A DNA stretch of 64,000 nucleotides, taken from positions 62,001 to 126,000 of IMG/VR virus record IMGVR_UViG_3300010885_076238; one strand, 5' to 3'. A model generated the notes under the pieces. That model was given only the letters and a program-made list of their open reading frames with translations, did not search any database and was not told the DNA's origin. How positions within the stretch are numbered: the stretch's first letter is position 1; every line of letters starts with the position of its first letter. A program made the translations under genes and the position numbers. This document shows, piece after piece, positions 13,797-63,608 of this stretch.

Positions 13797-13838
13797 ACTC
13801 GTCTTTACCAATAAATTAACTTGACCTACAATGATAGC

Positions 13839-14438
13839 ATGAACATAAAGAACGAACAGTTTTTGAAGCTAATCGATCAATACCCAGATGTTGCTTTTAG
13901 CTATTGTTCAGTAGCAAACAGATTCGCAGATAAAATTAATAAAAAAATATTTGATTCTGCTGAGTCGGTTTTGTTGCGTGATCCAAAGTATTGCTATAGG
14001 TACGCAGACGAAGTTATAAGAGGAAGATGGAAAAAAGCAGAAAACACTTTGTCTAAAGATATCGATTTTGCTTATAATTATGCTAAAAATATCTTAAAAA
14101 AAAGATTTTTATTGGCTGAAAATTTAATTTCTCAAGACCCTGAATATTCTTTATATTATGCTGAATTTGTTGTTAAAAAAAGATGGATGAAGGGCGAACA
14201 AGCAATATCAAGTAACCCAGCTTTCGCATATAAATATGCAGAATTTATAAAAAAAAGATTCTACAAAGGAGAAGAAGCAATAGGAGATAGTCCTGAATAT
14301 TCGTTTTATTATGCACAAAATATTATTCACGGAAAGTTGCCAGTAAAAATGCACTCAAAAATGATTGCGTATGCTTTGGATAATCCAAAAAATGAATTTA
14401 TTAATAAGTATTTTCAATTAATAAAATCTTCTGCTTGA
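13839..14438 (+). CDS. 26-aa helical-repeat protein, LP-HN-M family
   Basis: YAxxVIxGRWxxAE units; GKLPVKMHSKMIAYA. Confidence 0.8.
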   Translation: MNIKNEQFLKLIDQYPDVAFSYCSVANRFADKINKKIFDSAESVLLRDPKYCYRYADEVIRGRWKKAENTLSKDIDFAYNYAKNILKKRFLLAENLISQDPEYSLYYAEFVVKKRWMKGEQAISSNPAFAYKYAEFIKKRFYKGEEAIGDSPEYSFYYAQNIIHGKLPVKMHSKMIAYALDNPKNEFINKYFQLIKSSA

Positions 14439-23316: not shown

Positions 23317-24438
23317 ATGTCTAAACCAAAAGAAATAGTAAAAAGTGCGATGGATGGTAAGCTTCTTACAAAAGAAGAAAAGTCCATAGTTGCATCTAAT
23401 GCTCAATGCTCAAAAATCTATGCAGAAAAGGTTTTGCAAGAAAGATTTATTGAGGGCGAAGAAGTAATTAAAACTAGTGCTTCTCAAACCTACCTTTATG
23501 CAAAAGACGTTATAAAAGGAAGGTGGAAAGAAGGGGAAGACACTCTATCTAAAGATGCCCATTACGCAGTAAAATATGCTGCAAATGTTTTATTTGGAAG
23601 ATTTCCAAAAGGCGAAAATGAAATTGCAAAAAATCCTAAGGCGGCATATCAATACGCAGTGGCAAGGAGTGCGAGATTTGAAAAAGCAGAACAAAAAATG
23701 ATAGAAGAACTTCCGGCCATGGATTTGGTTGAATATAGCTTAAGTATTATCGGAGATAGATGGCCGGAAGCAGAAGAAAAGATATTAAAATCTTCGCGTC
23801 GTTCTGAGTCTTCCGTCGCCTTCGCTGAGACAATCGTCTATAGTCCATCTACTTCTTCCTATAGCTCTCCGGCGTGTCATTATGCTTGTGGGCATGAATT
23901 CAAATGGAAAGAAGCTGAGTCCGAAATCTTAAAGAATCCTGTGGAGTCTTCTCAATATGCAATTAACGCCTTAAAAGGAAGGTGGGAAGAAGGAGAAGAA
24001 ATTATTTCTACTTGTGGGTCTTCCTCTCTTACTTATGCTTTGTATTTAGAACAAGAGTTTGAAAAAGGAGAGGACGCAATAATCAATTTGATTGCAGAAG
24101 AAAACTCTTGGAGTTCTAATCACCTTATAAATAATTATGTTGGTCGAGTTTTACATGGGAAAAGATGGCTGAAGTTTGAAAGCTTTATCGATAAAGCAAA
24201 TATTGATGATGAAAAATTAACTACGCTAATACAATACTATAGCGATAATGTTAACGCAAAGCTGCCCGACTTCATTCACAATAGAATGATTGCCGCCGCT
24301 ATAAGCAACCCAGAAGATTGGGGCATTCGCAAATATTTCGATTCATTGGAAGAAAGAGAAGATAACGAAAAATTGCTTTTGGTCAAAAGATTTAGTTTAG
24401 ATCAACTTAGGGAAATATTGAGTTCAGTAAATGATTGA
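23317..24438 (+). CDS. 26-aa helical-repeat protein, LP-HN-M family
   Basis: Multiple YAxxVIKGRWxEGE units; AKLPDFIHNRMIAAA; promoter at 23272-23296. Confidence 0.85.
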   Translation: MSKPKEIVKSAMDGKLLTKEEKSIVASNAQCSKIYAEKVLQERFIEGEEVIKTSASQTYLYAKDVIKGRWKEGEDTLSKDAHYAVKYAANVLFGRFPKGENEIAKNPKAAYQYAVARSARFEKAEQKMIEELPAMDLVEYSLSIIGDRWPEAEEKILKSSRRSESSVAFAETIVYSPSTSSYSSPACHYACGHEFKWKEAESEILKNPVESSQYAINALKGRWEEGEEIISTCGSSSLTYALYLEQEFEKGEDAIINLIAEENSWSSNHLINNYVGRVLHGKRWLKFESFIDKANIDDEKLTTLIQYYSDNVNAKLPDFIHNRMIAAAISNPEDWGIRKYFDSLEEREDNEKLLLVKRFSLDQLREILSSVND

Positions 24439-25545: not shown

Positions 25546-26511
25546 ATGAACATGAACTCAAAAATAATTTCGATAATCAATCACGCTCAGTATTCTGATC
25601 GGGATGCTTGGGAAAAAGCTATAAGCGGAAACAAAGATTTTTTTGAACGAGAATTTATAGCAAAAAGTGCTCACATTTCTTTTGATTATGCCAAATCACT
25701 TGGAGAAAGATTTTCTCTTGGTGAAAAAGTGATTAGCGAAAGTGCAGAAAAAAGCTATAGATATGCCAAAGAAGTTTTGCTATCTAGGTTTGAATTAGGC
25801 GAGGAAAAAGTTCAAAAAGATATTGAATATTGTTACAGATATGCAAAAGATGTTATAAAAAATAGGTGGGAGCCAGCAGAAAAAAATCTCTTGAACTTAA
25901 AGTCATCGGAAGCAAATGAATTTTTAGTTTCCTATGCAATTAATATAATCAAAAGCCAATGGCCCGAGGCAGAGGAAAGAATCAAAAGTATTGAGCCTTA
26001 CCGAATTCACGATTATTGTGTAAATGCTCGAAAAAGCAGATGGGAAGAAGTAGAGCCTCAAATTTTGAACATGAGTGCAACTTCAATTATTGATTATTGT
26101 AAAAACTGCGTAAAAGGACGATGGGAAAAGGCCGAGGAAAAAATTCTAAAGTCTAAACCAACACATAATTTTATTGTTGATTATGCAAAGGAAGTTGTGT
26201 GCGGTCGATGGGTTGAGGGAGAAAAAGAAATGTTGACCGATAAAAAGGTCGCCATTAAAATTAAATATTGCGATGAAGTTCTTGAAGGAAGATGGAAAGA
26301 ATTAGAAGATATTTTATTTGAAAAAGAAAGTACCCAAAGATTATATCAATACGCAAAAGATGTAATAAAAGGGAAGCTGCCTGAGATTCTTCATAATAAA
26401 ATGCTTATGATAGCAATGCTCAAAAAAGACGATTGGACGAACAAGTATTTGAAAGCCAAAAAATACAAGATTGAAAAGAAACTAAAACTTTACGAGACCA
26501 ACAATGCCTAA
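25546..26511 (+). CDS. 26-aa helical-repeat protein, LP-HN-M family
   Basis: About 10 units; KGKLPEILHNKML; leaderless promoter at 25515-25539. Confidence 0.85.
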   Translation: MNMNSKIISIINHAQYSDRDAWEKAISGNKDFFEREFIAKSAHISFDYAKSLGERFSLGEKVISESAEKSYRYAKEVLLSRFELGEEKVQKDIEYCYRYAKDVIKNRWEPAEKNLLNLKSSEANEFLVSYAINIIKSQWPEAEERIKSIEPYRIHDYCVNARKSRWEEVEPQILNMSATSIIDYCKNCVKGRWEKAEEKILKSKPTHNFIVDYAKEVVCGRWVEGEKEMLTDKKVAIKIKYCDEVLEGRWKELEDILFEKESTQRLYQYAKDVIKGKLPEILHNKMLMIAMLKKDDWTNKYLKAKKYKIEKKLKLYETNNA

Positions 26512-28328: not shown

Positions 28329-28372
28329 AAATAAAAATTTATTCAAGCCGTTATGTGTATAAGGAGACAAAA

Positions 28373-29497
28373 ATGAACGAACAATTTGCCAATGTCATTC
28401 GCCAAAGAATTTACCAGCGTGTTCCTCTTGAGCAACTCGCAGAAGCAGGAATTAAGGAATTTTATGTTGCTGGCAATTCTTTGAATAAACAGCCCCCTAA
28501 CGATATTGATATTTTCCCAGTGGGAAATCTCTTTACTCAAGAGCAAGCTGAAAAGCTTGGAAATATCGTTAGTTCAACTAAAAACGCAATCACTGTTAAG
28601 GTTGGTCTTGATAAAAAAATCAACCATCAAACCGTAGATGGTCAGAATGAAATTGAAGTTAGTGGCAAAAACATTGTGGTTCAACTTTGTAATTACCAAC
28701 ACGGTGAACTTGAGTCTTTAGTTAATTCTTTTGATTTTTCTCATATCCAAATTGGAGCCAAGGTAGACAATCTTGGCATCACAGTCTATTACACTAAGGA
28801 ATATGAGAATGCAAAAATGTGTCAATCTACCGAATATGTCGGTAGCGAATACCCTTTGTCTTCTATGATTAGAATGTTCAAATACGCAAAGCGTGGCGAC
28901 TTTGCTGGAAATTCTCATATTTTTTCTGCTTTCAAAATCGTCACAGATGTTGTAGACAGAGGGTTTGATGACTTCGATGACTTCAAGAATCAATTGGATG
29001 CTATTGATCTTGGATTGGTTCCAGAAAATCAAAAGGAACTTGTTGATGCAGGCTTGGCATCAGAAGAATCCGGCTTGGATTTTTCTGAAGAAGGCAAAAA
29101 AGTTCTTAATAAACTGATGAGCTTTTTGATTTTGAGCAAGAAGGCGATTTGCAAAGACGCACAGGCTGCGTATGATTACGCACAAAGCTCTGGCGAACGA
29201 TTTGAAAAGGGCGAAGATGCGATTAGCAAAGATGAAAAATTGGCTCTTGCATATGCAAAAAATATATTGAAAGGTAGGTTTGAAAAAGGCGAAGAAGCCA
29301 TTTCTAACAATCCTTATTTGGTTCATGATTATTGGTGCAATGTGATTAACAAATCAATTCATGTATATGATGTATATAATAATAGCGATATGCAAAAACT
29401 GCCTGAATTTTTGCATAATAAAATGATCGCTTATGGGATGGATAATAATCATTATGCAAAAGACTATCTTTTTAGAATTTCAAAAATCGCAGCGTAA
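28373..29497 (+). CDS. Pol-beta-superfamily nucleotidyltransferase fused to helical repeats and LP-HN-M motif
   Basis: VAGNS...NDIDIF, SFDF, SMIRMFKYAKRG; C-terminal AYDYA...RFEKGE units and KLPEFLHNKMIA; promoter at 28330-28354. Confidence 0.7.
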   Translation: MNEQFANVIRQRIYQRVPLEQLAEAGIKEFYVAGNSLNKQPPNDIDIFPVGNLFTQEQAEKLGNIVSSTKNAITVKVGLDKKINHQTVDGQNEIEVSGKNIVVQLCNYQHGELESLVNSFDFSHIQIGAKVDNLGITVYYTKEYENAKMCQSTEYVGSEYPLSSMIRMFKYAKRGDFAGNSHIFSAFKIVTDVVDRGFDDFDDFKNQLDAIDLGLVPENQKELVDAGLASEESGLDFSEEGKKVLNKLMSFLILSKKAICKDAQAAYDYAQSSGERFEKGEDAISKDEKLALAYAKNILKGRFEKGEEAISNNPYLVHDYWCNVINKSIHVYDVYNNSDMQKLPEFLHNKMIAYGMDNNHYAKDYLFRISKIAA

Positions 29498-41421: not shown

Positions 41422-42345
41422 ATGGAACCAAAAGAAGCACATAAGGCCGCAAGGTCTGGCGAAATGCGTTGGACAGACGCAATAGAAATTTTCAAGAAAG
41501 ATCCCCAAACTGCTTTCGATTATGCGTCAGAAAATCGATCTAGATTTCTAGAAGCAGAAGAATACATCAAAACCAATGCTGAATTAGCTTGTGCATATGC
41601 ACAACGATTTATCAATGGAAGGTTTCCAGAAGCAGAAGAATACATTAAAAAAGATGCTCAACAGGCTTATAATTATGCCAGATATGTGATTAAAGGTAGA
41701 TTCCCAGAAGCAGAAGAACATATCAAAATCAACCCTGCGGTCGCTTGCAATTATGCAGATAGTGTGCTTGACGAAAGATTCTTAGAAGCAGAAGAATTTA
41801 TCAAACAAGACCCAAGAATTGCATTTGAGTACGCAAGAAGAGTAATTAGGGGAAGATGGATTGAAGCAGAAGATCATATTAAAATAGATGCTCAATCTGC
41901 TTACTTATATGCAAGAGATATTCTAGATCGAAGATGGGAAGAAGCAGAAGAATATATTAAAAAGCAGCCTGACTATGCCTGTGCATATGCAAGAAATGTA
42001 ATCAGAGGCAGATGGGAAGAAGCAGAGCCTTTTATCAAGAACGAAGTATTTGAAGCATTTGGTTATGCAAAAGATATTATCAGAGGTAGATTCTTAGAAG
42101 CAGAGAGCTTGATTAAAAAGAATTTGAGCATTGCTTTTGATTATGTTGAAGAAGTAGTAAAAGGAAGATGGATTGAAGCAGAAGATACCATTCTTAATGG
42201 CAAAAAGAAATCTCTAGAATATTGTTTGCGATATAACGCAAAATTGCCAGAAGCAATTCATAACAAAGTGTTAACAGAAGTTGCTTTTGATAGTAAAGTG
42301 CCAAACCTTGATCTTAAAAAGAAATATGTGAACAGGATCAAGTGA
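41422..42345 (+). CDS. 26-aa helical-repeat protein, LP-HN-M family
   Basis: About 9 regular units AxxYAxxVIxGR[W/F]xEAExxIK; AKLPEAIHNKV; leaderless promoter at 41391-41415. Confidence 0.88.
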   Translation: MEPKEAHKAARSGEMRWTDAIEIFKKDPQTAFDYASENRSRFLEAEEYIKTNAELACAYAQRFINGRFPEAEEYIKKDAQQAYNYARYVIKGRFPEAEEHIKINPAVACNYADSVLDERFLEAEEFIKQDPRIAFEYARRVIRGRWIEAEDHIKIDAQSAYLYARDILDRRWEEAEEYIKKQPDYACAYARNVIRGRWEEAEPFIKNEVFEAFGYAKDIIRGRFLEAESLIKKNLSIAFDYVEEVVKGRWIEAEDTILNGKKKSLEYCLRYNAKLPEAIHNKVLTEVAFDSKVPNLDLKKKYVNRIK

Positions 42346-42830: not shown

Positions 42831-42869
42831 TAATTTTGTTTGCGAGTTATACCAATAAGGAGACATGAA

Positions 42870-43415
42870 ATGAGCGAAAACGGAAGCCAAAAATACTTTG
42901 ATTTTCTTCACAAGTTAGAAAACGACGCTTCTTTTTGTTATAGTTATCTCGGAAATTGCCAAAGGGGTAGCGAAACATGGAACCAATGCTTGCAGACTAT
43001 TGCTAAAGACGCAAGCATTTCCTATACTTGGGCTGCCGCACTAAAATCAAGATTTGAACTTGGTGAACTTGCTATTTCAAAAGTGCCTCAATACTCTATT
43101 CCATATGCAAAAGATATTATAAAGGGCAGGTTCGTATTGGCAGAGCCAAAAATTTTAGAATCTTCTGCCGACTCTTTTAGGTACGCATCGACCGTAATAC
43201 ATGGAAGATGGTTAGAAGCAGAGCCAATAATTGCAAAAGATCCAAATCATTCTTTTCTTTATGCAAGAGATATAATCAAAGGAAGATTTGAACTTGGAGA
43301 AGAAACCATTGCTCACGATGAAGATGCTGCTTTTAGATACGCAACCGATATAATCAAGGGCAAGTTGCCAGAAAAAATGCACAATATTATGATTGCAAAA
43401 GGAGTGGCGGCATGA
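42870..43415 (+). CDS. 26-aa helical-repeat protein, LP-HN-M family
   Basis: Units plus KGKLPEKMHNIMIA; ATG 42870 with AAGGAG; variant promoter at 42826-42850. Confidence 0.85.
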   Translation: MSENGSQKYFDFLHKLENDASFCYSYLGNCQRGSETWNQCLQTIAKDASISYTWAAALKSRFELGELAISKVPQYSIPYAKDIIKGRFVLAEPKILESSADSFRYASTVIHGRWLEAEPIIAKDPNHSFLYARDIIKGRFELGEETIAHDEDAAFRYATDIIKGKLPEKMHNIMIAKGVAA

Positions 43416-45432: not shown

Positions 45433-46521
45433 ATGCCTAATACAATTACGCCAATCGAAGCAGCAAGCCTTTACTTCAAAGAAGGCTCAAGTGATAAAGT
45501 TTACAATGCTACCTTGGAAAAAGAGGATGACAACAAATATGTTGTTAATTTCTCTTACGGCAGACGAGGAAGTGCATTGAAGTCTGGATCCAAAACCTCA
45601 AGCCCCGTTTCTCTTAAGGAAGCCAAGACCATCTTTGACAAAATTGTCAGAGAGAAAACTTCTAAGGGCTATAAATACGTCACCGACGCTGTTGCTAAAG
45701 AAATTCATGTTGCCGACAACCCACCGGACACGCCTACTGAGTCCAAGTGCGTTTTGCTCAATCCAATCAGCGAAGAAGAACTTGAAAAGTATTTGAACGA
45801 TCCAGATTGGATTGCCCAACAGAAAATTGATGGAGTTAGATTTATGCTCCATAAGGTAAAAGATAAAATTACTGCGTATAACCGTCGCGGACTTTACGCA
45901 AACATTCCAACCGATCTTTATAATTTCGCAAAAAACACTCAAGAAGATTTTCTAGTTGATGGAGAATTGATTGGAGATGTTTTTCACACCTTCGATATTC
46001 TTGAATATAACGGCAAAGACCTTACTCAAAACTCAGTTGTCGAAAGGCTTGAGGTTTTGTTGAATTGGGTTAATAATAATCCGTGCGAACTTGTAAAGTA
46101 TACAGAAACTCAAAGTTCAAGCAAAATTGAATTTTATGATCGTCTTGTTCGTGAAAACCAAGAAGGAATTGTTTTCAAACATAAAGACGCAAAGTATTAT
46201 GCTGGTAGGCCCGCCAGCGGTGGAAAGTATGTAAAATATAAGTTTTACAGCACTTGTAGTTGTGTCGTGACTGATGTGAATAATAAAAGAAGCGTAAGTA
46301 TAGGCTTGCTCAATGGCAAAAAATTAGTTGATGCTGGGAATGTTACTATTCCTATCAATTTTGAAATTCCTAATAAGGATGACATTGTGGAAGTCAGATA
46401 CCTTTATGCAAGAAAGCAGTCTGGCTCTCTTTATCAGCCTGTGTATCTTGGCAAAAGAACCGATATTGTTAGAGAAGATTGCAAGCAAAGTCAACTGAAG
46501 TATAAATTTGATGATGAATAA
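45433..46521 (+). CDS. WGR-domain + ATP-dependent DNA ligase
   Basis: WGR: SSDKVY...YGRRG...EKTSKGY; ligase: QKIDG, DGEL, FDIL, EGIVFK, KYKF; OB fold VEVRY, LYQPVY. Confidence 0.85.
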   Translation: MPNTITPIEAASLYFKEGSSDKVYNATLEKEDDNKYVVNFSYGRRGSALKSGSKTSSPVSLKEAKTIFDKIVREKTSKGYKYVTDAVAKEIHVADNPPDTPTESKCVLLNPISEEELEKYLNDPDWIAQQKIDGVRFMLHKVKDKITAYNRRGLYANIPTDLYNFAKNTQEDFLVDGELIGDVFHTFDILEYNGKDLTQNSVVERLEVLLNWVNNNPCELVKYTETQSSSKIEFYDRLVRENQEGIVFKHKDAKYYAGRPASGGKYVKYKFYSTCSCVVTDVNNKRSVSIGLLNGKKLVDAGNVTIPINFEIPNKDDIVEVRYLYARKQSGSLYQPVYLGKRTDIVREDCKQSQLKYKFDDE

Positions 46522-47337: not shown

Positions 47338-47535
47338 ATGAACACGATTGACCAGCATCTTTCCGCTCTGATTCTAAAGCAAAGAGGCGATAATAGAAAA
47401 TTGGTTGACGAAGTTCTAAGTCTGTCGGCAGATAGTAAAAATAAAATTTTTCATATTCTTCTTGACTTAGACAACGAAAATAAAAGATTAAAAAATGATG
47501 CTCGTAGAGCAAAGTTTTATCCAAGTTTCAGATGA
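47338..47535 (+). CDS. hypothetical protein
   Basis: Short coupled ORF. Confidence 0.55.
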   Translation: MNTIDQHLSALILKQRGDNRKLVDEVLSLSADSKNKIFHILLDLDNENKRLKNDARRAKFYPSFR

Positions 47536-48074
47536 TAAAAAATCATGGCTACCAATCCATCATGGCTACCAATCCTATAGATTTCAAAAAAGCAACGCTT
47601 AATTATGGCAAGGAAGCCATAGAAGGTGTTCTAGTAATTGCGAATGATCCAGCAATAACTAAACTAGATAAAAAGTCAAGCGTTAAGATTCCTAAAAAAA
47701 TATTCGTGCCTGTAAAGGAGTCTGTTTTTTACACGAATAGTCCTGCTCATATGAATGAAGTTCTTGAAAGATGCAAACAAAGCGATATGTTAGAATTGCT
47801 TAGTTATTTAGACTTATCCGTACCTTTTATAGATGATTATTTCTTTGACGGCGACTCAGGATTTATAGTTAATTTTTATCAGCCAGATCAAGGAGATTGT
47901 CTGGCAGATCAGCGTTATCATAAATGTCCAGTTTGTATTCAATTGCTTGACCCAATCGAATGGCTAAACAATTGGGATATGAGCGACGATGATAAAAATA
48001 AATGGATCGTCGCCATGATAAACCAAAACCTACCAGAAAATATTAAAAATAAACTGCTTTTGATAGGCCTTTAA
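47532..48074 (+). CDS. hypothetical protein with terminal LP-xN motif
   Basis: C-terminus NLPENIKNKLLL. Confidence 0.65.
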   Translation: MIKNHGYQSIMATNPIDFKKATLNYGKEAIEGVLVIANDPAITKLDKKSSVKIPKKIFVPVKESVFYTNSPAHMNEVLERCKQSDMLELLSYLDLSVPFIDDYFFDGDSGFIVNFYQPDQGDCLADQRYHKCPVCIQLLDPIEWLNNWDMSDDDKNKWIVAMINQNLPENIKNKLLLIGL

Positions 48075-48120: not shown

Positions 48121-49137
48121 ATGAATAGCTACCACAAGCAATATAGAGAATTTGTCAAAGAACTCAACCCAACCGATGCAGAAGTTAATAATTTTTTGTG
48201 GGGACATAAAGCAGATTTCTCTCAACATAAGAAATTAGGAATAATTAAAAAAATTCTCACCAGTCCAAAATGGTGTTACGAATACGCAAAACTTATAAAT
48301 AAAGATAGATGGGAAAAGGGCGAAAAAACCATACTGACTGATGCCCAACATTCACACCTTTACGCAAGAGATATAATCAAAGGTAGATGGATCGAAGCAG
48401 AAGAAATTATCAAAACAGAATCCTCAATTGCGTATGATTATGCAGCAAACATAATCAAAGGCAGATGGATCGAAGCAGAAGAAATTATCAAAGAGGATTC
48501 ATATAGAACATATTTTTACGCAGCAAACATAATCAAAGGCAGATGGATCGAAGGCGAAGAAATTATCAAAACAGCCGGTGACGCTGACGCTGCTTATCAT
48601 TATGCAAAAGATATAATTAAAGGTAGATGGATAGAAGCAGAAGATTTTATTAAAACAAATCCAGGTTGTGCTTTTGGTTACGCAAATGATGTTATCAAAG
48701 GTAGATGGATCGAAGCAGAAGATTTTATTAAAACAAATCCATGCTATGCTTATGAGTATGCAAAAGATGTGATCAAAGGCAGATGGATCGAAGCAGAAGA
48801 TTTTATTAAAACAGATCCATACTATGCTTATTATTACGCAAGAGATGTCATCAAAGGTAGATGGATCGAAGGCGAAGAAATTATTAAAACAGATCCACGC
48901 CATGCTTATGATTATGCAAAAGATGTGATCGAAGGCAGATGGATCGAAGGTGAAGATATTATTAAAACAGATCTGCGTTATTCATGGGATTATGTTCGAA
49001 ATTTAGTAAAAGAAAGATGGGAAAATGGAGAAGGAATCTTCGCATCTGATCCACAATATTTGTATAGATATGCCACGGAAATTCTAATAGACGAACTACC
49101 CCCCGAATTAGAAGCAGCATACGCTTTACATGAATAA
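48121..49137 (+). CDS. 26-aa helical-repeat protein with near-identical units
   Basis: [I/V]I[K/E]GRWIE[A/G]E x8 plus degenerate flanks; promoter at 48073-48097. Confidence 0.9.
   Translation: MNSYHKQYREFVKELNPTDAEVNNFLWGHKADFSQHKKLGIIKKILTSPKWCYEYAKLINKDRWEKGEKTILTDAQHSHLYARDIIKGRWIEAEEIIKTESSIAYDYAANIIKGRWIEAEEIIKEDSYRTYFYAANIIKGRWIEGEEIIKTAGDADAAYHYAKDIIKGRWIEAEDFIKTNPGCAFGYANDVIKGRWIEAEDFIKTNPCYAYEYAKDVIKGRWIEAEDFIKTDPYYAYYYARDVIKGRWIEGEEIIKTDPRHAYDYAKDVIEGRWIEGEDIIKTDLRYSWDYVRNLVKERWENGEGIFASDPQYLYRYATEILIDELPPELEAAYALHE
48373..49002 (+). repeat. 78-bp coding tandem repeat, 8 copies (one of 84 bp)
   Basis: Near-constant core ATCAAAGGYAGATGGATCGAAG...ATYAAAAC with variable codons between copies. 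Confidence 0.9.
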
Positions 49138-49146
49138 GGAAATAAA

Positions 49147-49671
49147 ATGAAAATTATTAAGAAGATAGAAAAAAAATCAGAATACAGTGACAGGTTAGTA
49201 GCCACTACAATTTTATTTAAAAATGAACACGGAATTTTTCAACTAGACGATAGTAAAAATATTTTGCACAAGTGGAATGATAACGAAGGTTGGGTTTACG
49301 TTACCAACGAAACGACAGGCATTAATGACGCAAAAAATTTAATAGAAGAAATGTTTACGCCAGAAACGATCCTGCCTAAAGAAATTGAAGAGCCTCAAAA
49401 ATTTCTTATAAGTAACGATTCGATTTTATCCGACGAAGAAGTGATGATAGTAGTAAACATTGTGAAAAAAGCAGTGAATGAATGGAGACTGTTTCCCGGC
49501 ATGAACGAAGAAAAAAAAGAATGTTTACAAGAATTGGAGTATCTTAGATATTGTAATGATAACGAACTCACAGCCTTCTTTAAACACTCTGGCAAAATCT
49601 TTCTTAGTAGTCTGCCAGAAATGATTAAAAATAAACTAATCTGCAAAATGGCTTTCAAAGAAGCTGCCTAG
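49147..49671 (+). CDS. hypothetical protein with terminal LP-xN motif
   Basis: SLPEMIKNKLIC near the C-terminus. Confidence 0.7.
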   Translation: MKIIKKIEKKSEYSDRLVATTILFKNEHGIFQLDDSKNILHKWNDNEGWVYVTNETTGINDAKNLIEEMFTPETILPKEIEEPQKFLISNDSILSDEEVMIVVNIVKKAVNEWRLFPGMNEEKKECLQELEYLRYCNDNELTAFFKHSGKIFLSSLPEMIKNKLICKMAFKEAA

Positions 49672-49692
49672 TATTAAATTAAAGGAGAAACA

Positions 49693-50049
49693 ATGGAAAA
49701 TAAAGTTTTTGCGTTAATTTCTAAAGAGGAAGGCTACGAACTACTTCTTGAATTTTATAGTATCTGGTTTGCTGCAAGAAACATCAAAGATATTCTGAGT
49801 GAAGATAGACATCTTGACCTTCCTTCTTTTAGAAACTGCTCAGAGGACATTTGCTTGTTGTCACGAACATTGGGGCAAAAAGAAGTGTTTGATTTTATTA
49901 AAGAAAAACTAGATTGTGAAGAAATAGTTCTAGAAGATGAAAGAAATAAAATTCTAGTTAATTCACAAGAAGATGACGACGAAGAAGATGACGAAGATGA
50001 TGATGACGACGAATATGACGATGATGACGACGAAGAAGAAGATGAATAA
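49693..50049 (+). CDS. protein with long poly-D/E tail
   Basis: Ends EDDDEEDDEDDDDDEYDDDDDEEEDE. Confidence 0.75.
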   Translation: MENKVFALISKEEGYELLLEFYSIWFAARNIKDILSEDRHLDLPSFRNCSEDICLLSRTLGQKEVFDFIKEKLDCEEIVLEDERNKILVNSQEDDDEEDDEDDDDDEYDDDDDEEEDE

Positions 50050-50067
50050 TTATTAAGGAATTAAAAG

Positions 50068-50292
50068 ATGTGGATAAGCCCCAATAAGCACCGTGTAAAG
50101 GTTGGAGACAGACTTAGGCTCACTAACCACCTAAGTCAAGAAAGCCTGCCTATCGGCCTATTAGGAACCGTTACCCATGTAAATGAAGGAACCTATAACC
50201 TTCATATTCATATGAAATGGGACAACGGCTCAACCCTAGCATTACTGGAAACTGACAGCGATTGCTACGAAATTGTCAAAGAAGAAAAATAA
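50068..50292 (+). CDS. DUF4314-like SH3-fold protein
   Basis: VGDRLRL...GTV...WDNGSTLAL. Confidence 0.6.
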   Translation: MWISPNKHRVKVGDRLRLTNHLSQESLPIGLLGTVTHVNEGTYNLHIHMKWDNGSTLALLETDSDCYEIVKEEK

Positions 50293-50315
50293 AAATTAGA
50301 AATGGATAATAACTA

Positions 50316-50630
50316 ATGACTAGTATTAGATTGATTACTTTTTATGAAGCCCCCGACTGCTGGGACATTGCAGAGGCCGATCTAGACAAAGAGATTGATG
50401 AACAATTAGATGAATATGTAGCCTCTAACATACAAAACATTACCAGTCCAGGCTTTGTTGTAAAAGATTTTGAAGTGCCAGAAAATTTAGAAAAACAACT
50501 AATTCTAGATATTTGTAACGGAAAGTCTATGGCAGTTTGGATCGAGAAATCCGTGGATTTTCATAGCGAATATTACCAAAATTGGATCTTTTTCAAGAAT
50601 AAAGAAAACTCTTGGGAAGACCTAAAATAA
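50316..50630 (+). CDS. hypothetical protein
   Basis: Operon ORF. Confidence 0.65.
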   Translation: MTSIRLITFYEAPDCWDIAEADLDKEIDEQLDEYVASNIQNITSPGFVVKDFEVPENLEKQLILDICNGKSMAVWIEKSVDFHSEYYQNWIFFKNKENSWEDLK

Positions 50631-50656
50631 TAATTAACCCAACGCGTTATGCCACT

Positions 50657-50899
50657 ATGAGATGGAACTACAGACTGCTTGATAGGTCGCACAAAAACGG
50701 TGGAGAACCTTGGCTTGAAATCGTAGAGGTTTATTATGATGAACATAACAAACTAATAGGATTTTCTGAACCTTGTCTCAACGCAGAAAATAAAGAAGAA
50801 GTTATAAGCACCCTACAGATGATTATTAAAGATATTAGCAAAGAAAATGTGCTAAATGTTTCTGATTTCGGAATGACAATACAACAGGATACGCAATAA
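50657..50899 (+). CDS. hypothetical phage protein (MRWNYR...EVYY)
   Basis: Leaderless ATG 6 nt after the promoter at 50626-50650. Confidence 0.7.
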   Translation: MRWNYRLLDRSHKNGGEPWLEIVEVYYDEHNKLIGFSEPCLNAENKEEVISTLQMIIKDISKENVLNVSDFGMTIQQDTQ

Positions 50900-50901
50900 A
50901 T

Positions 50902-51138
50902 ATGAATATTCTTTCAAAACAACAACATTTGTTTGTTAAAAATGCTGTTGATAAACATTTGGGATTTAAAGAAAATCACAACTACTCAGAAAACGAAGAA
51001 ATCAAAATTAAAAAAGTTGTTGCAAACTTTGTGAACTCAATCAATGAAGAAGCAAGTGTGCCTAAAGTATTGGATGGATATTTAGATGATTATCTCGATT
51101 TTCTCGTAATTTGTGCTTGTGCCGATTCTGTGGAATAA
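50902..51138 (+). CDS. hypothetical protein
   Basis: Operon ORF. Confidence 0.6.
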   Translation: MNILSKQQHLFVKNAVDKHLGFKENHNYSENEEIKIKKVVANFVNSINEEASVPKVLDGYLDDYLDFLVICACADSVE

Positions 51139-51290
51139 AAATAAACATGAGTGAAACCGAAAATTATTCTCTGAGTGAGTTGGCTAATTCTTTGGCAACT
51201 GCATCAAATATTGCCAAAATATTAGGAATATAGCCTAGTTACTACTGGCGATTCGTTTAATCTTTTAAGGGAAGTTTTGGAGAATAAATA

Positions 51291-51638
51291 ATCAAAATAA
51301 TCCCTCTACAAGACTGTAAAGACAGACACCTTTACATAATTAATTCTAGAAATTTTAATCTTGGTGTTTTTGACGCTAAGAACAGAGATTTTATTGGAAT
51401 AAGAATAAAAATTGGAGATACATTTTTAGACAGAGAAAACCACAGTATTGGCTGTGTCAAAGTGTTTGAAGAAATAGAAAATATTCCAGACCATATTGAA
51501 CTAAAAATAGGACACCGCTCTGAAACTGAACTTAATGTTTGGGGAGATCGTTTATGGGTGGAAAATAAAGATCTTTTTAACTATCTGGAAGATAAGTGCC
51601 GTAATCTATTAGCAAAGGATAATGACAAAATACAGTAG
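51291..51638 (+). CDS. 115-aa ORF with apparent ATC start (not in track)
   Basis: IKIIPLQDCKDRHLYIINSRNFNLGVFD...FIGIR...*; GGAG 8 nt upstream; TAATC junction. Confidence 0.55.
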   Translation: MKIIPLQDCKDRHLYIINSRNFNLGVFDAKNRDFIGIRIKIGDTFLDRENHSIGCVKVFEEIENIPDHIELKIGHRSETELNVWGDRLWVENKDLFNYLEDKCRNLLAKDNDKIQ

Positions 51639-51737
51639 AATAAAAAAGCTCAATCTCTTGTCTCAAGTTCATTTTTGGCACTACAACCCCTGAAATAATA
51701 TTTGATCTGATCCGCTATCCTCAATGAAGGTAACACC

Positions 51738-52691
51738 ATGAACGCTAAAGAATCATACTTTCACGCAAAAAATGTTCTCAAAGGAAGAAGCAAAGACTTT
51801 GAAGATCATATATTAAAAACCAAATGGAATTGTTGGTCAGAAGATCATAAGTATTACAACCTTTATTTTAAAAATATACTCAAAGGCAGATGGGAAGAAT
51901 TAGAAAATCGCCTTGTAAAAGACATTGTGGCTCCAAAAAAAGGAGATATGCTTTCGCACAACGAGTGGAACATAGCAATAAATTATTGTGAAAATATTAA
52001 TGAAAGATGCAATGAATTAGAAGAAAAAATATTATCTCTTGTTAAAAATTGGCGCTTTGATGATATGGCAATAAACTATTGTGAAAAAGTCATCAAAGGA
52101 AGATGGGAAGAATTAGAAGAAATTATTAAAAAAGAGCCAAATTCCCTTTCTCGCGCACACACTTGCTACTTGTACGCAGAAAGAATCATAAAAGGCAGAT
52201 GGAAGGAAGCAGAAGAACTTATTAAAGAAGAACCAAGAGTCGCTGTTGATTATGCTAGAGAAATAATCAAAGGCAGATGGAATGAAGCAGAGCCATACAT
52301 TCTAAAAAATGAATTATGGGCATTCAATTATGCAAGAGACATAATCAAAGATAGATGGATCGAAGCAGAAAATATTATTACAGGCTCCGCACAAAAATAT
52401 TACAAACAACTTGTTAAAAATAAAATTCTCGACCTGTTACAAAAAAAAGATTATGACAATGTTTTGAAATACGTTGATTATAAGCACTTCACTAATATCA
52501 TTAAAAATGCAGAGAAAAAGCACCACATTCCAGATGCTATCCGAAATGCGATGATGGCATCCTGCATCACAGGAAACGACCAAAACAGCACCAGCTTTTT
52601 CAAACAAGAAAAAATCTTCAAGGAAAAAATGAAAAATTTCTTGAAAGATTATAAAGGATTACTTGTTGATGATGTAATCGACAAGCTATAA
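51738..52691 (+). CDS. helical-repeat protein, LP-HN-M family
   Basis: IKGRWxE[L/A]E units; IPDAIRNAMMA; terminal VDDVIDKL. Confidence 0.85.
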   Translation: MNAKESYFHAKNVLKGRSKDFEDHILKTKWNCWSEDHKYYNLYFKNILKGRWEELENRLVKDIVAPKKGDMLSHNEWNIAINYCENINERCNELEEKILSLVKNWRFDDMAINYCEKVIKGRWEELEEIIKKEPNSLSRAHTCYLYAERIIKGRWKEAEELIKEEPRVAVDYAREIIKGRWNEAEPYILKNELWAFNYARDIIKDRWIEAENIITGSAQKYYKQLVKNKILDLLQKKDYDNVLKYVDYKHFTNIIKNAEKKHHIPDAIRNAMMASCITGNDQNSTSFFKQEKIFKEKMKNFLKDYKGLLVDDVIDKL

Positions 52692-52733
52692 AATAATAAT
52701 TAATATCATTGGTTATCAAGCAGAGGAACAAAT

Positions 52734-53552
52734 ATGACCCCACAAGAAGCATATTCTGAATTAATTAATCTTTTCAATAGCTCCCGACGAGGAATCGTCT
52801 TTTACTTTAAAGATTTTATTAATGCACCCGAACACAAAAAAGAAGTAGATGAACTAAAAAAAATAATTATTCAAGACCCCTTCACCGCTTCAGATTTTGC
52901 AATAAGTTCCGGCGAAAGATGGATCGAAGCAGAAGAAATTATTAAAACAAATCCAAAAATATTAAGCCATTATTTTTGTATGTTGTTTACAAGGGAATTC
53001 AAAAGAAGATGGAATGAAGCAGAAGCAGATATTCTAAAAGGAACTCCTAATAGTGTTTGGGATTATTATAAACCTGTGCAGTATCATGTGTCAAACTCTT
53101 TCCCAGACAATGTTTGGATAGAAGCAGAACCAGTTTTTGAAAAGAAAATGAGCATCTTTCATCAATATGTTCTAACCACAAAAAAGCCCAACAAAACCTA
53201 TGAACAAAAAATATTAAATGATCCAAGTTCTAAATATAATCCCAAATACATCTATGACTACTCTTCCAAAGTTCTACAAAGCAGATGGAAAGAAGCAGAA
53301 CATATAATATTAAAAAATCCAGACTACGCAGCAAAATATTGCTCGAAATTTAAGATGGTAGTTCCAGAAGAAATTCATAACCAAATAGTTGCAGAAGTCG
53401 CCTTAACCGACAAATCTTCCTCTTTCAGAAAGAAATTTCTCCAAGATCAAACCAAAAGAAAAGAAAAATTTTTAGAATATCTCAAAGAACTTGTTAGTAG
53501 TAATGTTATTAACAAAGATAGCACAGTTGAAGAATTAATAAATAATATTTAA
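52734..53552 (+). CDS. helical-repeat protein, LP-HN-M family
   Basis: RWIEAE units; VPEEIHNQIVA; terminal TVEELINNI. Confidence 0.85.
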   Translation: MTPQEAYSELINLFNSSRRGIVFYFKDFINAPEHKKEVDELKKIIIQDPFTASDFAISSGERWIEAEEIIKTNPKILSHYFCMLFTREFKRRWNEAEADILKGTPNSVWDYYKPVQYHVSNSFPDNVWIEAEPVFEKKMSIFHQYVLTTKKPNKTYEQKILNDPSSKYNPKYIYDYSSKVLQSRWKEAEHIILKNPDYAAKYCSKFKMVVPEEIHNQIVAEVALTDKSSSFRKKFLQDQTKRKEKFLEYLKELVSSNVINKDSTVEELINNI

Positions 53553-53571: not shown

Positions 53572-54441
53572 ATGACAACTCTAAAAATCCCCAAGTTCAG
53601 AAATGCCAAAAGAGCAGCAGAGTTTGCTGTTAAACACAAAGTTACACTAAACGAAGAAACAGAAAAATTAATAGCACAAGACGCTGTAGCGTCCTACAAC
53701 TACGCATATCACGTTAAAGGCAAATTTGAACTTGCTGAACCCTTAATCGCTAAAGATTTGCATTTAGCAGTAATCTACGCCATCTATATTCTAAAAGGTA
53801 GATTCTATCTGGCCGAAAAAATGATTGCAGAATCTATCACAGAATATGGCTTGAAAAAAGAAAATTTCTATAACGCACCAGCATTTAATTACGCAAGAAG
53901 TGTTTGCCAAGGAAGATTTGAACTATTAGAACCATTAATTATTAATGATCCTGATCTTTGCTATCATTACGCCGCAGATGTTATTGGAGGAAGATGGGAG
54001 GAAGGAGAACCAACAATAGCAAAAGATTTACAACTTTCTCTGAATTATGCAAGATATGTATTAGACGGAAGATTTGAACTAGCAGAACCCTTGCTTGCAC
54101 AAGACTCAGACTACGCTTTTGAATACGCATCAGATGTTATTAACAGATATATAACTAACTGCGACTACAGAGACAGAACAAATAAACTTGCAAAAAGATT
54201 TGAACTTGGTGAAGAAGCTATTTCTAAAAATATTAAGAAATTAGCAAAATATATCGATCTAACCAAACAAGAACTAACAGGCACTATTCACAACATGATG
54301 ATCGCAAGAAGCCTAACCGATGACCTTCTTTCAAAAACATACTTCGATTACATCAGCGATAATAAAAAAACACTACTAGAGTATTTGAGCAAATATCCCG
54401 AAAATATGACCGTAAAAGAAATAACCCAATCTCTTAGTTAA
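53572..54441 (+). CDS. helical-repeat protein, LP-HN-M family
   Basis: PKFRNAKRA N-motif; GRFELAE units; LTGTIHNMMIA; leaderless promoter at 53541-53565. Confidence 0.85.
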   Translation: MTTLKIPKFRNAKRAAEFAVKHKVTLNEETEKLIAQDAVASYNYAYHVKGKFELAEPLIAKDLHLAVIYAIYILKGRFYLAEKMIAESITEYGLKKENFYNAPAFNYARSVCQGRFELLEPLIINDPDLCYHYAADVIGGRWEEGEPTIAKDLQLSLNYARYVLDGRFELAEPLLAQDSDYAFEYASDVINRYITNCDYRDRTNKLAKRFELGEEAISKNIKKLAKYIDLTKQELTGTIHNMMIARSLTDDLLSKTYFDYISDNKKTLLEYLSKYPENMTVKEITQSLS

Positions 54442-62894: not shown

Positions 62895-63608
62895 ATGGAA
62901 AATACCCCTAAGAAGCCTACTGAAATTCTTCCTTATAGGGAAGAGGATTGGGCAGGCGTTAGCGTTCCTAAGTTTAGGGATGCGAGTCGTGCGTGGAAGT
63001 TTTTGAAGAAGCATGGTTTTTATCGGCTTCCTGAGAAAACTGAATTAGTATTTTTGAAGGATTTATCATTAGCGATAGATTATGCTGTTCGGGTAGGCAC
63101 TAGGTTGCCGGTTGTTTTTGAAACTGAGTTGAAGAAGCATCCTCAGTTGAGTTATGATTATATTTCTAGGGTGATTCAGGCGCCTTTGGAGGAATTTGAA
63201 GAAACTATTAGCAAGGTTCCTTCGTTGCTTGTGAAGTATAGTCATGAAATTTTAGAGGCGCCTTTGCCGGAGCATTTGGAAAATTGTTTGGCGGGTGATC
63301 CGTATAATTGTTTTGAATATGCGTGGCAGGTTCTTGACGGACGTTTGCCGGAAACTTTGCACAACTATATGTTTTGTGCTAACATGGACAATAACTTTGG
63401 ACGTAGGTATCGTGGTGGGTATCATACTAAGTTGAAGGGAGCAGAGGAATACAGTCCTGACTATGTTAGTCCAGAGACTTATTTTGAATTTATCAAGTGG
63501 CAAAGGAAAAATTTGCACAGGCAGATTCAGCATTATCAAAAAATTTATGGTGTTGAATCGAAGCAGACTGTTGGCGAATTTTTACATGAATTAGAGCATG
63601 GTCGTTAA
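62895..63608 (+). CDS. LP-HN-M family protein
   Basis: VPKFRDASRAW N-motif; GRLPETLHNYM; terminal QTVGEFL; promoter at 62853-62877. Confidence 0.8.
   Translation: MENTPKKPTEILPYREEDWAGVSVPKFRDASRAWKFLKKHGFYRLPEKTELVFLKDLSLAIDYAVRVGTRLPVVFETELKKHPQLSYDYISRVIQAPLEEFEETISKVPSLLVKYSHEILEAPLPEHLENCLAGDPYNCFEYAWQVLDGRLPETLHNYMFCANMDNNFGRRYRGGYHTKLKGAEEYSPDYVSPETYFEFIKWQRKNLHRQIQHYQKIYGVESKQTVGEFLHELEHGR

What the first reader, a model, noticed from the sequence alone, without database searches (positions are those of the whole stretch)
48373..52960. Recently amplified 78-bp repeats with hypervariable slots, and unit sharing between paralogues
Seen: eight DNA-level near-identical units vary mainly in the 4 residues after IK[T/E] (ESSI, DSYR, NPGC, NPCY, DPYY, DPRH, DLRY; one 6-aa insert) and in the [A/T/S]-[Y/F/W]-x-Y position (D, F, H, G, E, Y, D, D). 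A 39-nt stretch at about 52917 (AGATGGATCGAAGCAGAAGAAATTATTAAAACAAATCCA) differs by 2 nt from the unit at about 48703, though the two genes are otherwise divergent. Inference: a constant scaffold with variable contact residues (TALE/PPR/VLR-like logic), reshuffled by recombination or gene conversion among paralogues.
Basis: partly seen in the sequence, partly recalled or inferred. Interest (0 to 1): 0.68.

Follow-up and report, generated by a model that had tools for sequence, protein, structure and literature searches.

The report
Phage helical-repeat binder family, tandemly grown
A gene in an uncultured 204-kb freshwater phage encodes a rod of ten 26-residue helix-turn-helix units with a constant core and variable outward-facing residues; it belongs to a large phage-only repeat family that no database names and most likely serves as a customisable protein-binding module.

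Summary
Gene 48121-49137 (+) holds ten in-frame 78-bp units: eight near-identical core units and one degenerate unit at each end. The 39-nt stretch at 52917-52955 differs by 2 nt from 48703-48741. A second assembly has the same array.

AlphaFold gives a confident all-alpha solenoid (pLDDT 88.9). Fold searches find only generic HEAT/TPR/Sel1-like solenoids, and no Pfam, NCBIfam or PDB relative exists. The phage carries 12 paralogues. More than 700 unnamed relatives occur in metagenomic phage contigs, and none in GenBank phages.

The variable positions (3, 20-23, 26) are the same ones that vary across the whole family. By helical periodicity they lie on one face of the long helix.

- **Recent amplification:** only relatively so. 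Synonymous difference between units is 0.38 per site.
- **Diversifying selection:** not shown. Slot dN/dS is about 0.8.
- **TALE/PPR-like code:** not supported. There are 283 distinct slot pairs and the protein is acidic.
- **Population variation:** no repeat-number variant seen, on fragmentary data.
- **Exchange between paralogues:** suggested by three sharply bounded patches (P <0.003 to 0.02), not proven.

Best reading: an undescribed short HEAT-like repeat family that grows by tandem unit duplication and acts as a binding module, probably for proteins.

The parts
48121..49137 (+). Focal gene, 338 aa, acidic (pI 5.2). Layout: N-terminal cap, ten 26-residue units, short degenerate C-terminal cap.
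   Evidence: ORF list; unit register; AF2 pLDDT 88.9, pTM 0.81, all-alpha; charge.
48283..48360 (+). Unit 0, a degenerate first repeat (YAKLINKDRWEKGE...).
48361..48990 (+). Eight near-identical core units of 78 bp (the one at 48517 is 84 bp). Unit starts: 48361, 48439, 48517, 48601, 48679, 48757, 48835, 48913.
   Evidence: Longest exact inter-unit repeats are 24-34 bp.
48580..48591 (+). 6-nt tandem duplication (GACGCT twice) that lengthens the slot of the unit at 48517 by 2 residues.
48991..49068 (+). Unit 9, a degenerate last repeat (YVRNLVKERWENGE...).
49069..49134 (+). Degenerate, truncated copy of the family's C-terminal module (ELPPELEAAYALHE, against KLPExxHNxMIA... in the paralogues).
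52917..52955 (+). 39-nt patch in paralogue 52734-53552. It is 2 nt different from 48703-48741 and its flanks match only at chance level.
   Evidence: (P<0.003).
52332..52370 (+). 39-nt patch (2 mismatches) in paralogue 51738-52691, matching 48364-48402.
   Evidence: (P=0.013).
43257..43287 (+). 31-nt patch (2 mismatches) in paralogue 42840-43415, matching 48358-48388. The match ends abruptly on the 3' side.
   Evidence: (P=0.02).
51738..52691 (+). Paralogue, 317 aa, about 5 units plus the C-terminal module.
52734..53552 (+). Paralogue, 272 aa, degenerate units plus the C-terminal module.
53572..54441 (+). Paralogue, 289 aa.
41422..42345 (+). Paralogue, 307 aa, 9-10 regular units. It is the closest paralogue to the focal gene (50% identity).
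42840..43415 (+). Paralogue, 191 aa.
28355..29497 (+). Paralogue, 380 aa. It has a 265-aa N-terminal part of unknown kind, then 2-3 units and the C-terminal module.
25546..26511 (+). Paralogue, 321 aa.
23317..24438 (+). Paralogue, 373 aa.
13821..14438 (+). Paralogue, 205 aa, basic (pI 9.2).
62895..63608 (+). Degenerate family member, 237 aa, with the C-terminal GRLPETLHNYM motif.

Best explanation
The gene encodes a member of a large, so far unnamed, phage-restricted family of short (26-residue) HEAT-like alpha-solenoid repeats.

Each unit is a 12-residue helix A (unit positions 21-26 plus 1-6), a K-G-R-W turn, and a 7-residue helix B (positions 11-17). The conserved residues build the hydrophobic core, the helix caps and a probable Arg/Glu ladder: Y1, A2, V/I5, I6, G8, R9, W10, E12, A13, E14, I17, D20, P21, A24, Y25. 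Positions 22, 23, 26, 3 and 4 point outward on one face of helix A. Because units stack in register, these positions should form a continuous stripe along the rod.

The array grew by in-frame tandem duplication of the 78-bp unit, by slippage or unequal recombination on 24-34-bp exact repeats. This happened after the gene separated from its 11 paralogues in the same phage. The units then diverged mainly at the exposed stripe.

The most likely function is a modular binding surface, probably for a host or phage protein. The phage diversifies it by gene duplication, unit duplication and possibly short conversion patches between paralogues. In other phages the same array forms the C-terminal half of proteins that carry an N-terminal catalytic or unknown domain.

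Shown here: the repeat anatomy, the fold class, the family size and phage restriction, the paralogue expansion, the position of the variability, and the authenticity of the array.

Inferred: that the stripe is a contact surface, that the ligand is a protein, and the role in infection.
For: - **Anatomy:**
- **Fold:** AF2 gives pLDDT 88.9 and pTM 0.81, with about 98 in the repeats, and a regular helix-12/helix-7 pattern. The best local structural superpositions are HEAT-type proteins: symplekin (Z 6.5, rmsd 4.2 over 182 residues), PP2A-A, TOG domains, adaptins, alphaRep and YibA. The nearest ESM Atlas clusters are Uroviricota hypothetical proteins.
- **Co-faciality:** on the helices, the variable positions sit at 180-300 degrees of the helical wheel and the conserved ones at 340-140 degrees.
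- **Family-wide pattern:** the same positions vary within and between 120 homologues (Spearman 0.84).
- **Slot composition:** slots are enriched in Y, W, R, D, H and N, as is typical of protein-protein hot spots (general knowledge).
- **Intragenic amplification:** same-codon fraction is 0.83 within the gene, 0.57-0.65 elsewhere, and 0.46 expected from codon usage. Other family genes show the same within-gene unit similarity.
- **Family:** 12 paralogues in the phage, all with a shared C-terminal module. More than 700 relatives were found. Most listed hits have an N-terminal domain of about 250 aa, and one cluster has an AAA_5 ATPase.
- **Phage restriction:** no GenBank phage hit. Only 11 loci turned up in representative genomes of 185,579 species, all of them in MAGs.
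- **Authenticity:**
Against: - No ligand, expression or phenotype data exist.
- Slot dN/dS is about 0.8, on few sites and non-independent unit pairs. That is compatible with simple relaxed constraint on exposed residues.
- Co-faciality is inferred from helical periodicity, not measured on coordinates.
- Structural matches are only generic (Z at most 7.3, below the level that is meaningful for helical repeats).
- Paralogue pI ranges from 5.2 to 9.8, so different members may bind different classes of ligand.
- The N-terminal domain of the homologues has no recognisable fold. The 'targeting module' idea therefore rests on domain architecture alone.
Confidence: 0.6

Rival explanations
1. The variable slots are only unconstrained surface residues drifting neutrally. 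The protein would be a structural rod, spacer or scaffold (for example a virion or assembly component) with no unit-by-unit recognition.
For: Slot dN/dS is about 0.8, close to neutral. The same positions vary in every family member, as expected for any exposed site. One homologue lies directly upstream of a terminase large-subunit gene.
Against: Other exposed positions vary across the family (15, 16, 18, 19, with between-protein mismatch frequencies of 0.74-0.87). In the focal array these positions are far less variable between units than the slot (0.0-0.57 against 0.82-0.93). Slots are enriched in Y, W, R, D and H. The focal gene sits among small genes of unknown function, not among structural genes.
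Confidence: 0.25
2. TALE/PPR-like modular reader of nucleic acid. Each unit would read one base through its slot residues.
For: Near-identical tandem units with a few variable residues formally resemble TALE repeats. PPR, HPR and Pumilio proteins appear among the weak structural matches. Some paralogues are basic (pI 9.2-9.8).
Against: The focal protein is acidic (net charge -14). Slot pairs show no small alphabet: 283 distinct pairs, effective number about 165. There is no Pfam hit to the TALE, PPR or PUF families. Structural Z values are at noise level for helical repeats.
Confidence: 0.06
3. The 39-nt identity between 52917 and 48703 (and the two other patches) reflects shared ancestry, strong constraint and preferred codons in the most conserved part of the unit. 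It would not reflect gene conversion or unit exchange.
For: All patches lie in the most conserved segment (positions 1-21). No extant focal unit is an exact donor. The patch already exists in a related strain (run X3; loose ends at 48741), so it is not recent. The focal units use the commonest codons. The eight focal units are not independent, which inflates the counts.
Against: With amino acids fixed and codons resampled from family usage, a stretch this long was never reached in 300 trials for gene 52734, and the other two patches gave P=0.013 and 0.02. Paralogue pairs not involving the focal gene never reach 100% codon identity in comparable windows (0 of 34, against 5 of 72). Identity drops from 95% to chance level at both patch edges, and the flanking residues that are otherwise conserved (Y1, V5, I6, K7, A24, Y25) are not conserved in that unit.
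Confidence: 0.4
4. Acidic DNA-mimic decoy, of the anti-restriction or anti-defence kind. A regular ladder of Glu/Asp along the solenoid would imitate the DNA backbone.
For: Net charge is -14 with periodic E12, E14, E/D15, D4 and D20. The gene is a phage accessory gene.
Against: A pI of 5.2 is only mildly acidic. Paralogues range up to pI 9.8 with the same scaffold. The conserved Glu residues are probably paired with the invariant R9 (inference). No PADLOC or anti-defence evidence was sought or found.
Confidence: 0.05
5. Artefact or targeted mutagenesis. Either the array is a mis-assembly of a collapsed repeat, or a diversity-generating retroelement writes the slots.
For: Short-read assemblies often mis-handle repeats, and Logan contigs break inside the array.
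Against: A second assembly has an identical array. The pieces tile it without differences, and every unit carries a unique slot sequence. The breaks coincide with 30-34-bp exact repeats, about the 31-letter word size Logan uses. The 204-kb record contains no reverse transcriptase, while controls were positive.
Confidence: 0.02

Closest known systems
HEAT-like repeats, including the short PBS-lyase type and the artificial alphaRep scaffolds derived from it
   Same: Two antiparallel helices per unit stack into an alpha-solenoid. The core is conserved and a few exposed positions are highly variable. The best local superpositions are with HEAT proteins (symplekin, PP2A-A, TOG, adaptins, alphaRep, YibA).
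   Different: The unit is 26 residues, against about 30-47. No HEAT, HEAT_2 or HEAT_PBS profile match was found. The signature is different (YAxxVIKGRWxEAE...DPxxAY). The family is phage-restricted. Z values are only 5-7.
TPR / Sel1-like repeats
   Same: Helical hairpin solenoid that serves as a protein-binding scaffold. Weak structural matches exist (Sel1-like 4bwr and 6ok3, Z about 7; consensus TPR in Foldseek). TPR_7 gives a sub-threshold hit in paralogue 41422.
   Different: Those units are 34-44 residues with different consensus positions. No profile match above the cut-off. The rmsd is 16-22 A over the full length, so the superhelix differs.
TALE repeats (and PPR/PUF code repeats)
   Same: Near-identical tandem units at DNA level, with variability concentrated in a few residues per unit. 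Recombination-prone arrays.
   Different: There is no small residue alphabet. The protein is acidic. The unit length and fold details differ. No family profile hit. No evidence of nucleic-acid binding.
Lamprey VLR / other LRR receptors diversified by cassette conversion
   Same: The idea of a constant repeat scaffold with variable contact residues, reshuffled among paralogous cassettes.
   Different: The fold is all-alpha rather than LRR. Only three short patches hint at exchange. No somatic or programmed assembly mechanism is apparent.
Pfam Phage_FRD3 (PF05798, T4 Frd.3), HTH_35 (PF13693), DUF4116 (PF13475), Phage_gp38 (PF22130)
   Same: Units of some homologues or paralogues match about 25-30 positions of these small models: P0003 scores 38 bits to PF05798, P0004 scores 26 bits to DUF4116, and paralogue 41422 scores 27.5 bits to PF22130.
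   Different: No single matched stretch passed on its own (the 'stretches' column reads 0). The whole-protein scores appear to be sums over repeated partial matches (inference). The focal protein has no such hit at E up to 1. Most of these families are not known to me to have a characterised function (own knowledge); PF13693/HTH_35 is named a winged-helix DNA-binding domain and appears in a paper on the nucleoid-associated protein EnrR.

Membership tests
HEAT / HEAT-like (Pfam PF02985, PF13646, PF03130) | Significant match to a HEAT-family sequence profile | tested here: not met
   No HEAT-type family is listed for the focal protein at E up to 1, or for six paralogues at E up to 0.01.
HEAT / HEAT-like (Pfam PF02985, PF13646, PF03130) | Units of two antiparallel helices stacked into an alpha-solenoid | tested here: met
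   The AF2 model shows a regular 12-residue plus 7-residue helix pattern (pLDDT about 98 in the repeats). The best local superpositions are HEAT proteins.
HEAT / HEAT-like (Pfam PF02985, PF13646, PF03130) | Unit length of about 30-47 residues | tested here: not met
   The unit is 26 residues (78 bp) throughout the family.
TPR / Sel1-like | 34-44-residue unit with a match to TPR/SLR profiles | tested here: not met
   Only a sub-threshold TPR_7 hit in one paralogue (20.1 bits against a cut-off of 27.9). The unit is 26 aa.
TALE | 33-35-residue repeats with a small alphabet of repeat-variable di-residues that read DNA bases | tested here: not met
   The unit is 26 aa. There are 283 distinct slot pairs, effective number about 165. 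No TAL_effector hit. The protein is acidic. DNA binding itself cannot be tested here.
PPR / PUF | 35-36-residue repeats, family profile match, RNA-recognition code positions | tested here: not met
   No profile hit. Structural Z is 5.0-5.8 with rmsd 7.7-15.5 A.
VLR / LRR | Leucine-rich repeat fold with a beta-strand in every unit | tested here: not met
   The model has no strands.
DGR variable protein | Reverse transcriptase and a template repeat in the same element | tested here: not met
   No RVT_1 match in the 204-kb record, while the controls were positive. The record is 88% complete, so absence is not absolute.
Phage_FRD3 (PF05798) | Profile match above the gathering score | tested here: inconclusive
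   The focal protein has no hit at E up to 1. Homologue P0003 scores 38.4 bits (cut-off 28.1), but no individual stretch passed on its own.
The unnamed 26-residue repeat family itself (YAxxVIKGRW[PI]E[AG]ExxIxxDPxxAYx) | Tandem 26-residue units with the invariant R9 and E14, and Y1-A2, W/F10 and E12 conserved | tested here: met
   Ten units in the focal gene. The same signature appears in 829 units of 126 homologues. R9 and E14 were fixed by the search pattern used there, so their invariance is partly by construction. The A1 alignment shows them nearly invariant independently.

The most novel reading that the evidence does not exclude
The family could be a phage-encoded repertoire of evolvable binders. 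In this reading, in-frame unit duplication and loss, plus short conversion patches between a dozen paralogues, continually create new recognition stripes aimed at host defence or host takeover targets. That would be a germline analogue of cassette-based receptor diversification, built on the shortest known helical-hairpin repeat (26 residues).
Probability: 0.12. Interest if true: 0.8.

Novelty: new variant of a known kind. Interest (0 to 1): 0.45.

Why it matters
If the reading is right, uncultured large phages carry a widespread and completely unannotated binder scaffold. It counts hundreds of members and up to a dozen copies per genome, and it has no Pfam, PDB or literature record.

Defining it would annotate many 'hypothetical' phage genes. 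It would give a handle on host-takeover or anti-defence interactions in phages with unknown hosts. It would also offer protein engineers a very short natural helical repeat (26 residues) with a clear map of constant and variable positions.

The claims that would have made this exceptional are not supported by the present data: a recognition code, ongoing hypervariation, or programmed reshuffling.

Tried and rejected
**Close relatives for repeat-number or slot variation**
- The search for related loci in viral contigs found nothing with the focal protein, its upstream neighbour or the nearby DNA ligase.
- Megablast and tblastn against GenBank phages found nothing.
- A second word search with the N-terminal 160 aa, meant to catch fragmentary orthologues, found nothing above 62% identity.
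- Only Logan contig fragments of related strains (runs X3, X4) exist. They show no gaps in the array parts they cover but are too fragmentary for site-wise analysis.
- The 'goes back 284' joint belongs to a different repeat gene, because its flanks are unlike the window. It is not a rearrangement.

**Domain and fold searches**
- Pfam, NCBIfam and PHROGs give no named family.
- An HMM search of PDB sequences found nothing below E 0.29.
- Foldseek against PDB found nothing at E 0.001 or better. VIA-align wide gave Z at most 7.3, generic solenoids only.

**N-terminal domain of the metagenomic homologues**
- It folds well (pLDDT 87.9) but has no fold match and no Pfam match.
- It is absent from this phage.

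**Other ideas tested**
- DGR: no reverse transcriptase.
- Higher-order 156- or 318-bp periodicity suggested by TRF scores: the unit identity matrices show no i/i+4 excess, so it was dropped.
- Antisense ORF 48499-48903: treated as a by-product of a repeat that lacks stop codons, not as a gene.
- Literature: no paper mentions the motif or the family.

**Calls that failed**
- The search for related loci with alignment A1 failed for lack of a conserved stretch. It worked with A3.
- The genome search on loci L034, L032 and L023 was not possible because those records are not held.

**Not used**
- The large HMMER representative search was left out. The word search already gave hundreds of unnamed relatives, and that library has no names.
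- Complex prediction was left out because no partner is proposed.

Full report
**1. Setting**

The window is bases 62001-126000 of a 204,311-bp linear IMG/VR virus record, 88% complete by CheckV. GC content is about 33%. Almost all genes are short and lie on the + strand, and no tRNA gene was found.

Recognisable genes in the window are two ATP-dependent DNA ligases, an RNA ligase and a helicase. The DNA occurs in freshwater metagenomes. No GenBank phage is similar at DNA or protein level.

**2. The observation**

TRF reports a period-78 array at 48360-48973. Translated, gene 48121-49137 (338 aa) has the following layout:
- a 54-residue N-terminal cap;
- ten 26-residue units, starting at 48283, 48361, 48439, 48517, 48601, 48679, 48757, 48835, 48913 and 48991;
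- a short C-terminal cap.

The eight middle units are 65-90% identical at nucleotide level, and 74-93% identical over their first 57 nt. The first and last units are degenerate.

Variability between units is concentrated at unit positions 22, 23 and 26 (2.4-2.5 bits), then 3 (1.9) and 20-21 (1.75). The one longer unit owes its two extra residues to a tandem duplication of GACGCT at 48580-48591.

The 39-mer at 52917-52955 is exact. It lies 2 mismatches from 48703-48741, against no matches expected by chance.

**3. Authenticity**

A separate 16-kb metagenome contig (L018) is 99.99% identical over 9,014 bp and contains the same ten units.

Logan contigs of runs X1 and X2 tile the array without differences. 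They break where units share 30-34-bp exact repeats, about the 31-letter word size Logan uses.

Runs X3 and X4 hold related strains. Their pieces covering array parts differ at about 2-10% of positions, and those lying within the array have no gaps. No repeat-number variant was seen. The one 'goes back' joint has flanks from a different repeat gene.

The array is therefore real. Population-level hypervariability was not observed, though the data are too fragmentary to exclude it.

**4. Structure**

AlphaFold2 with a 30-sequence alignment gives pLDDT 88.9 and pTM 0.81, with about 98 across the repeats. The model is purely helical. Each unit consists of:
- a 12-residue helix A, spanning unit positions 21-26 and then 1-6 of the next unit;
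- the K-G-R-W turn;
- a 7-residue helix B, spanning positions 11-17.

On a helical wheel of helix A, the variable positions 22, 23, 26, 3 and 4 fall at 180-300 degrees. The conserved A24, Y25, Y1, A2, V/I5 and I6 fall at 340-140 degrees. The variable residues are thus co-facial and opposite the core. This is an inference from periodicity, because coordinates could not be read.

Fold searches give only generic alpha-solenoids:
- Foldseek finds nothing at E 0.001 or better.
- VIA-align wide gives Z at most 7.3. The best local fits are HEAT proteins: symplekin at rmsd 4.2 A over 182 residues, PP2A-A, TOG domains, adaptins, alphaRep and YibA. Sel1-like, TPR, PPR/HPR and designed repeats also appear.
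- The nearest ESM Atlas clusters are Uroviricota hypothetical proteins.
- No solved relative exists by sequence.

**5. Family**

The phage carries 12 family genes, 11 of them in the window. All share a C-terminal module of the form KLPExxHNxMIA...KYF, which is degenerate and truncated in the focal gene.

The word search returns more than 700 relatives, none named and none closer than 48-61% identity. A second search finds many short members as well. The consensus unit is YAxxVIKGRWPEAExxIxxDPxxAYx.

Most listed homologues carry an N-terminal domain of about 250 residues with an invariant Cys. That domain folds confidently but matches no known fold or Pfam family. One cluster carries an AAA_5 (MoxR-like) ATPase instead. 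One homologue lies next to the terminase gene in a 305-kb NCBI metagenome-assembly contig of huge-phage size.

Among species-representative genomes, only 11 loci were found. All are in MAGs of unrelated phyla and none is in an isolate. This fits phage contigs that were binned by mistake.

Pfam, NCBIfam and PHROGs give no named family. Only summed partial matches to small models appear (Phage_FRD3, HTH_35, DUF4116, Phage_gp38, RepB), and no single stretch passes on its own. The held literature does not mention the motif.

**6. Are the slots special?**

Across 120 homologues, the positions that differ between units of one protein are the same as in the focal gene (Spearman 0.84). 'Constant scaffold plus variable stripe' is therefore a family property, not a peculiarity of this gene.

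In the focal array the slot is more variable than other exposed positions. Mismatch frequency between units is 0.82-0.93 at positions 3, 22, 23 and 26. It is 0.0-0.57 at positions 15, 16, 18 and 19, even though those positions vary between proteins at 0.74-0.87. This mildly favours a functional role for the slot.

Nei-Gojobori estimates over the 28 unit pairs are as follows.

| Region | pS | dN/dS |
|---|---|---|
| Scaffold | 0.38 | 0.19 |
| Slot | not stated | 0.81 |

Positive selection is therefore not demonstrated, and the units are not very young. The estimates rest on few sites and on non-independent pairs.

Slot di-residues show no small alphabet. Over 1,204 units there are 283 distinct pairs, with an effective number of about 165. 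Y, D, R, H, W, C and N are enriched. Together with the acidic charge of the protein, this argues against a TALE/PPR-type code and for a protein-contact surface.

**7. Amplification**

| Comparison | Same-codon fraction at identical residues |
|---|---|
| Within the focal array | 0.83 |
| Focal units vs units of other paralogues | 0.63 |
| Between the other paralogues | 0.57 |
| Within other paralogues | 0.65 |
| Expected from codon usage | 0.46 |

Each focal unit's nearest neighbour is another focal unit. The units therefore multiplied, or were homogenised, inside this gene after the paralogues split. The most similar units are adjacent (48601-48912, up to 90% identity). Other family genes in unrelated contigs show similar within-gene unit identity (mean 0.6-0.82), so tandem unit turnover is a recurrent habit of the family.

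**8. Exchange between paralogues**

Three patches stand out among all paralogue pairs:
- 48703 / 52917: 39 nt, 2 mismatches;
- 48364 / 52332: 39 nt, 2 mismatches;
- 48358 / 43257: 31 nt, 2 mismatches.

With amino acids fixed and codons resampled from family usage, stretches this long occur with P <0.003, 0.013 and 0.02. The closest paralogue, 41422, shows nothing unusual (P 0.55).

An empirical background points the same way. In 34 comparable windows between non-focal paralogues, none reaches full codon identity. Among focal-versus-other windows, 5 of 72 do, and three of those involve the 52734 unit.

The 52917 patch drops to chance-level identity at both edges. It sits in a unit that has lost the residues otherwise conserved on either side.

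This pattern is what a short conversion tract would leave. Three caveats apply. The focal units are not independent. All patches lie in the most constrained segment. The patch predates at least one strain split. I put conversion at roughly 0.5-0.6.

**9. Other mechanisms**

No reverse transcriptase is present in the record, and the positive controls worked. A DGR is therefore unlikely.

**10. Verdict**

This is a constant-scaffold, variable-stripe repeat protein, and its units multiplied within the gene. It is a HEAT-like alpha-solenoid of an undescribed, phage-restricted 26-residue repeat family and most likely a protein-binding module.

It is not a TALE/PPR/VLR-type coded reader. Recency, diversifying selection and population variation are not shown, and inter-paralogue reshuffling is suggestive only.

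- No model coordinates were available.
- No full-length orthologues were found.
- The reads tool returned contigs only.

Noticed in passing
window 47542-47575: A perfect 17-bp tandem duplication sits at the very start of ORF 47532-48074. The related strain in run X3 lacks one copy ('47542 left out 17'). The gene's 5' end, or its start codon, therefore differs between strains.
   Followed up: partly
window 3317-4591 and 45433-46521 (also 236-1204): The window holds two separate ATP-dependent DNA ligase genes. The second has an N-terminal WGR domain. There is also an RNA ligase of the T4 Rnl/tail-fibre-attachment type.
   Followed up: no
window 49967-50045 (in ORF 49693-50049) and 62370-62419: Asp/Glu-rich low-complexity tails are encoded by imperfect 12-24-bp and 18-bp repeats. 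Logan contigs show many different continuations at 49967-50000, so this stretch is polymorphic or shared with other genomes.
   Followed up: no
window 48031: The window has T here, while all four runs have C. The single mismatch between the window and the independent contig L018 may be this same site; its position was not printed. This is either a private variant or a consensus error of the IMG/VR record.
   Followed up: partly
C-terminal ends of all 12 paralogues (e.g. window 14300-14438, 43370-43415, 63330-63450): All paralogues share a C-terminal module (G-K/R-L-P-E-x-x-H-N-x-M-I-A ... K-Y-F) that replaces the GRWxExE turn of the last unit. It is truncated in the focal gene and in 42840-43415. 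Its role is unknown.
   Followed up: partly
proteins P0003, P0013, P0001 and others (N-terminal ~250 aa); alignment A2: Most metagenomic homologues carry an N-terminal domain with a G-T-K-W-C-T-A motif and an invariant Cys. It folds confidently (pLDDT 87.9) but matches no PDB fold or Pfam family. It is absent from this phage.
   Followed up: yes
loci L035, L039, L040, L043 (one Promethearchaeota MAG) and L037, L044 (one Verrucomicrobiales MAG): Several contigs of single MAGs from unrelated phyla carry family members. These are probably large-phage contigs binned into MAGs, which is worth flagging for those bins.
   Followed up: no
window 48499-48903 (- strand): A 134-aa antisense ORF runs through the repeat array. 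It looks like a by-product of a stop-free repeat rather than a gene.
   Followed up: no
window 61614-61714: A 33-bp tandem repeat of 3 copies (82% matches) lies inside ORF 61338-61829, in a stretch where GC skew jumps to +0.4.
   Followed up: no
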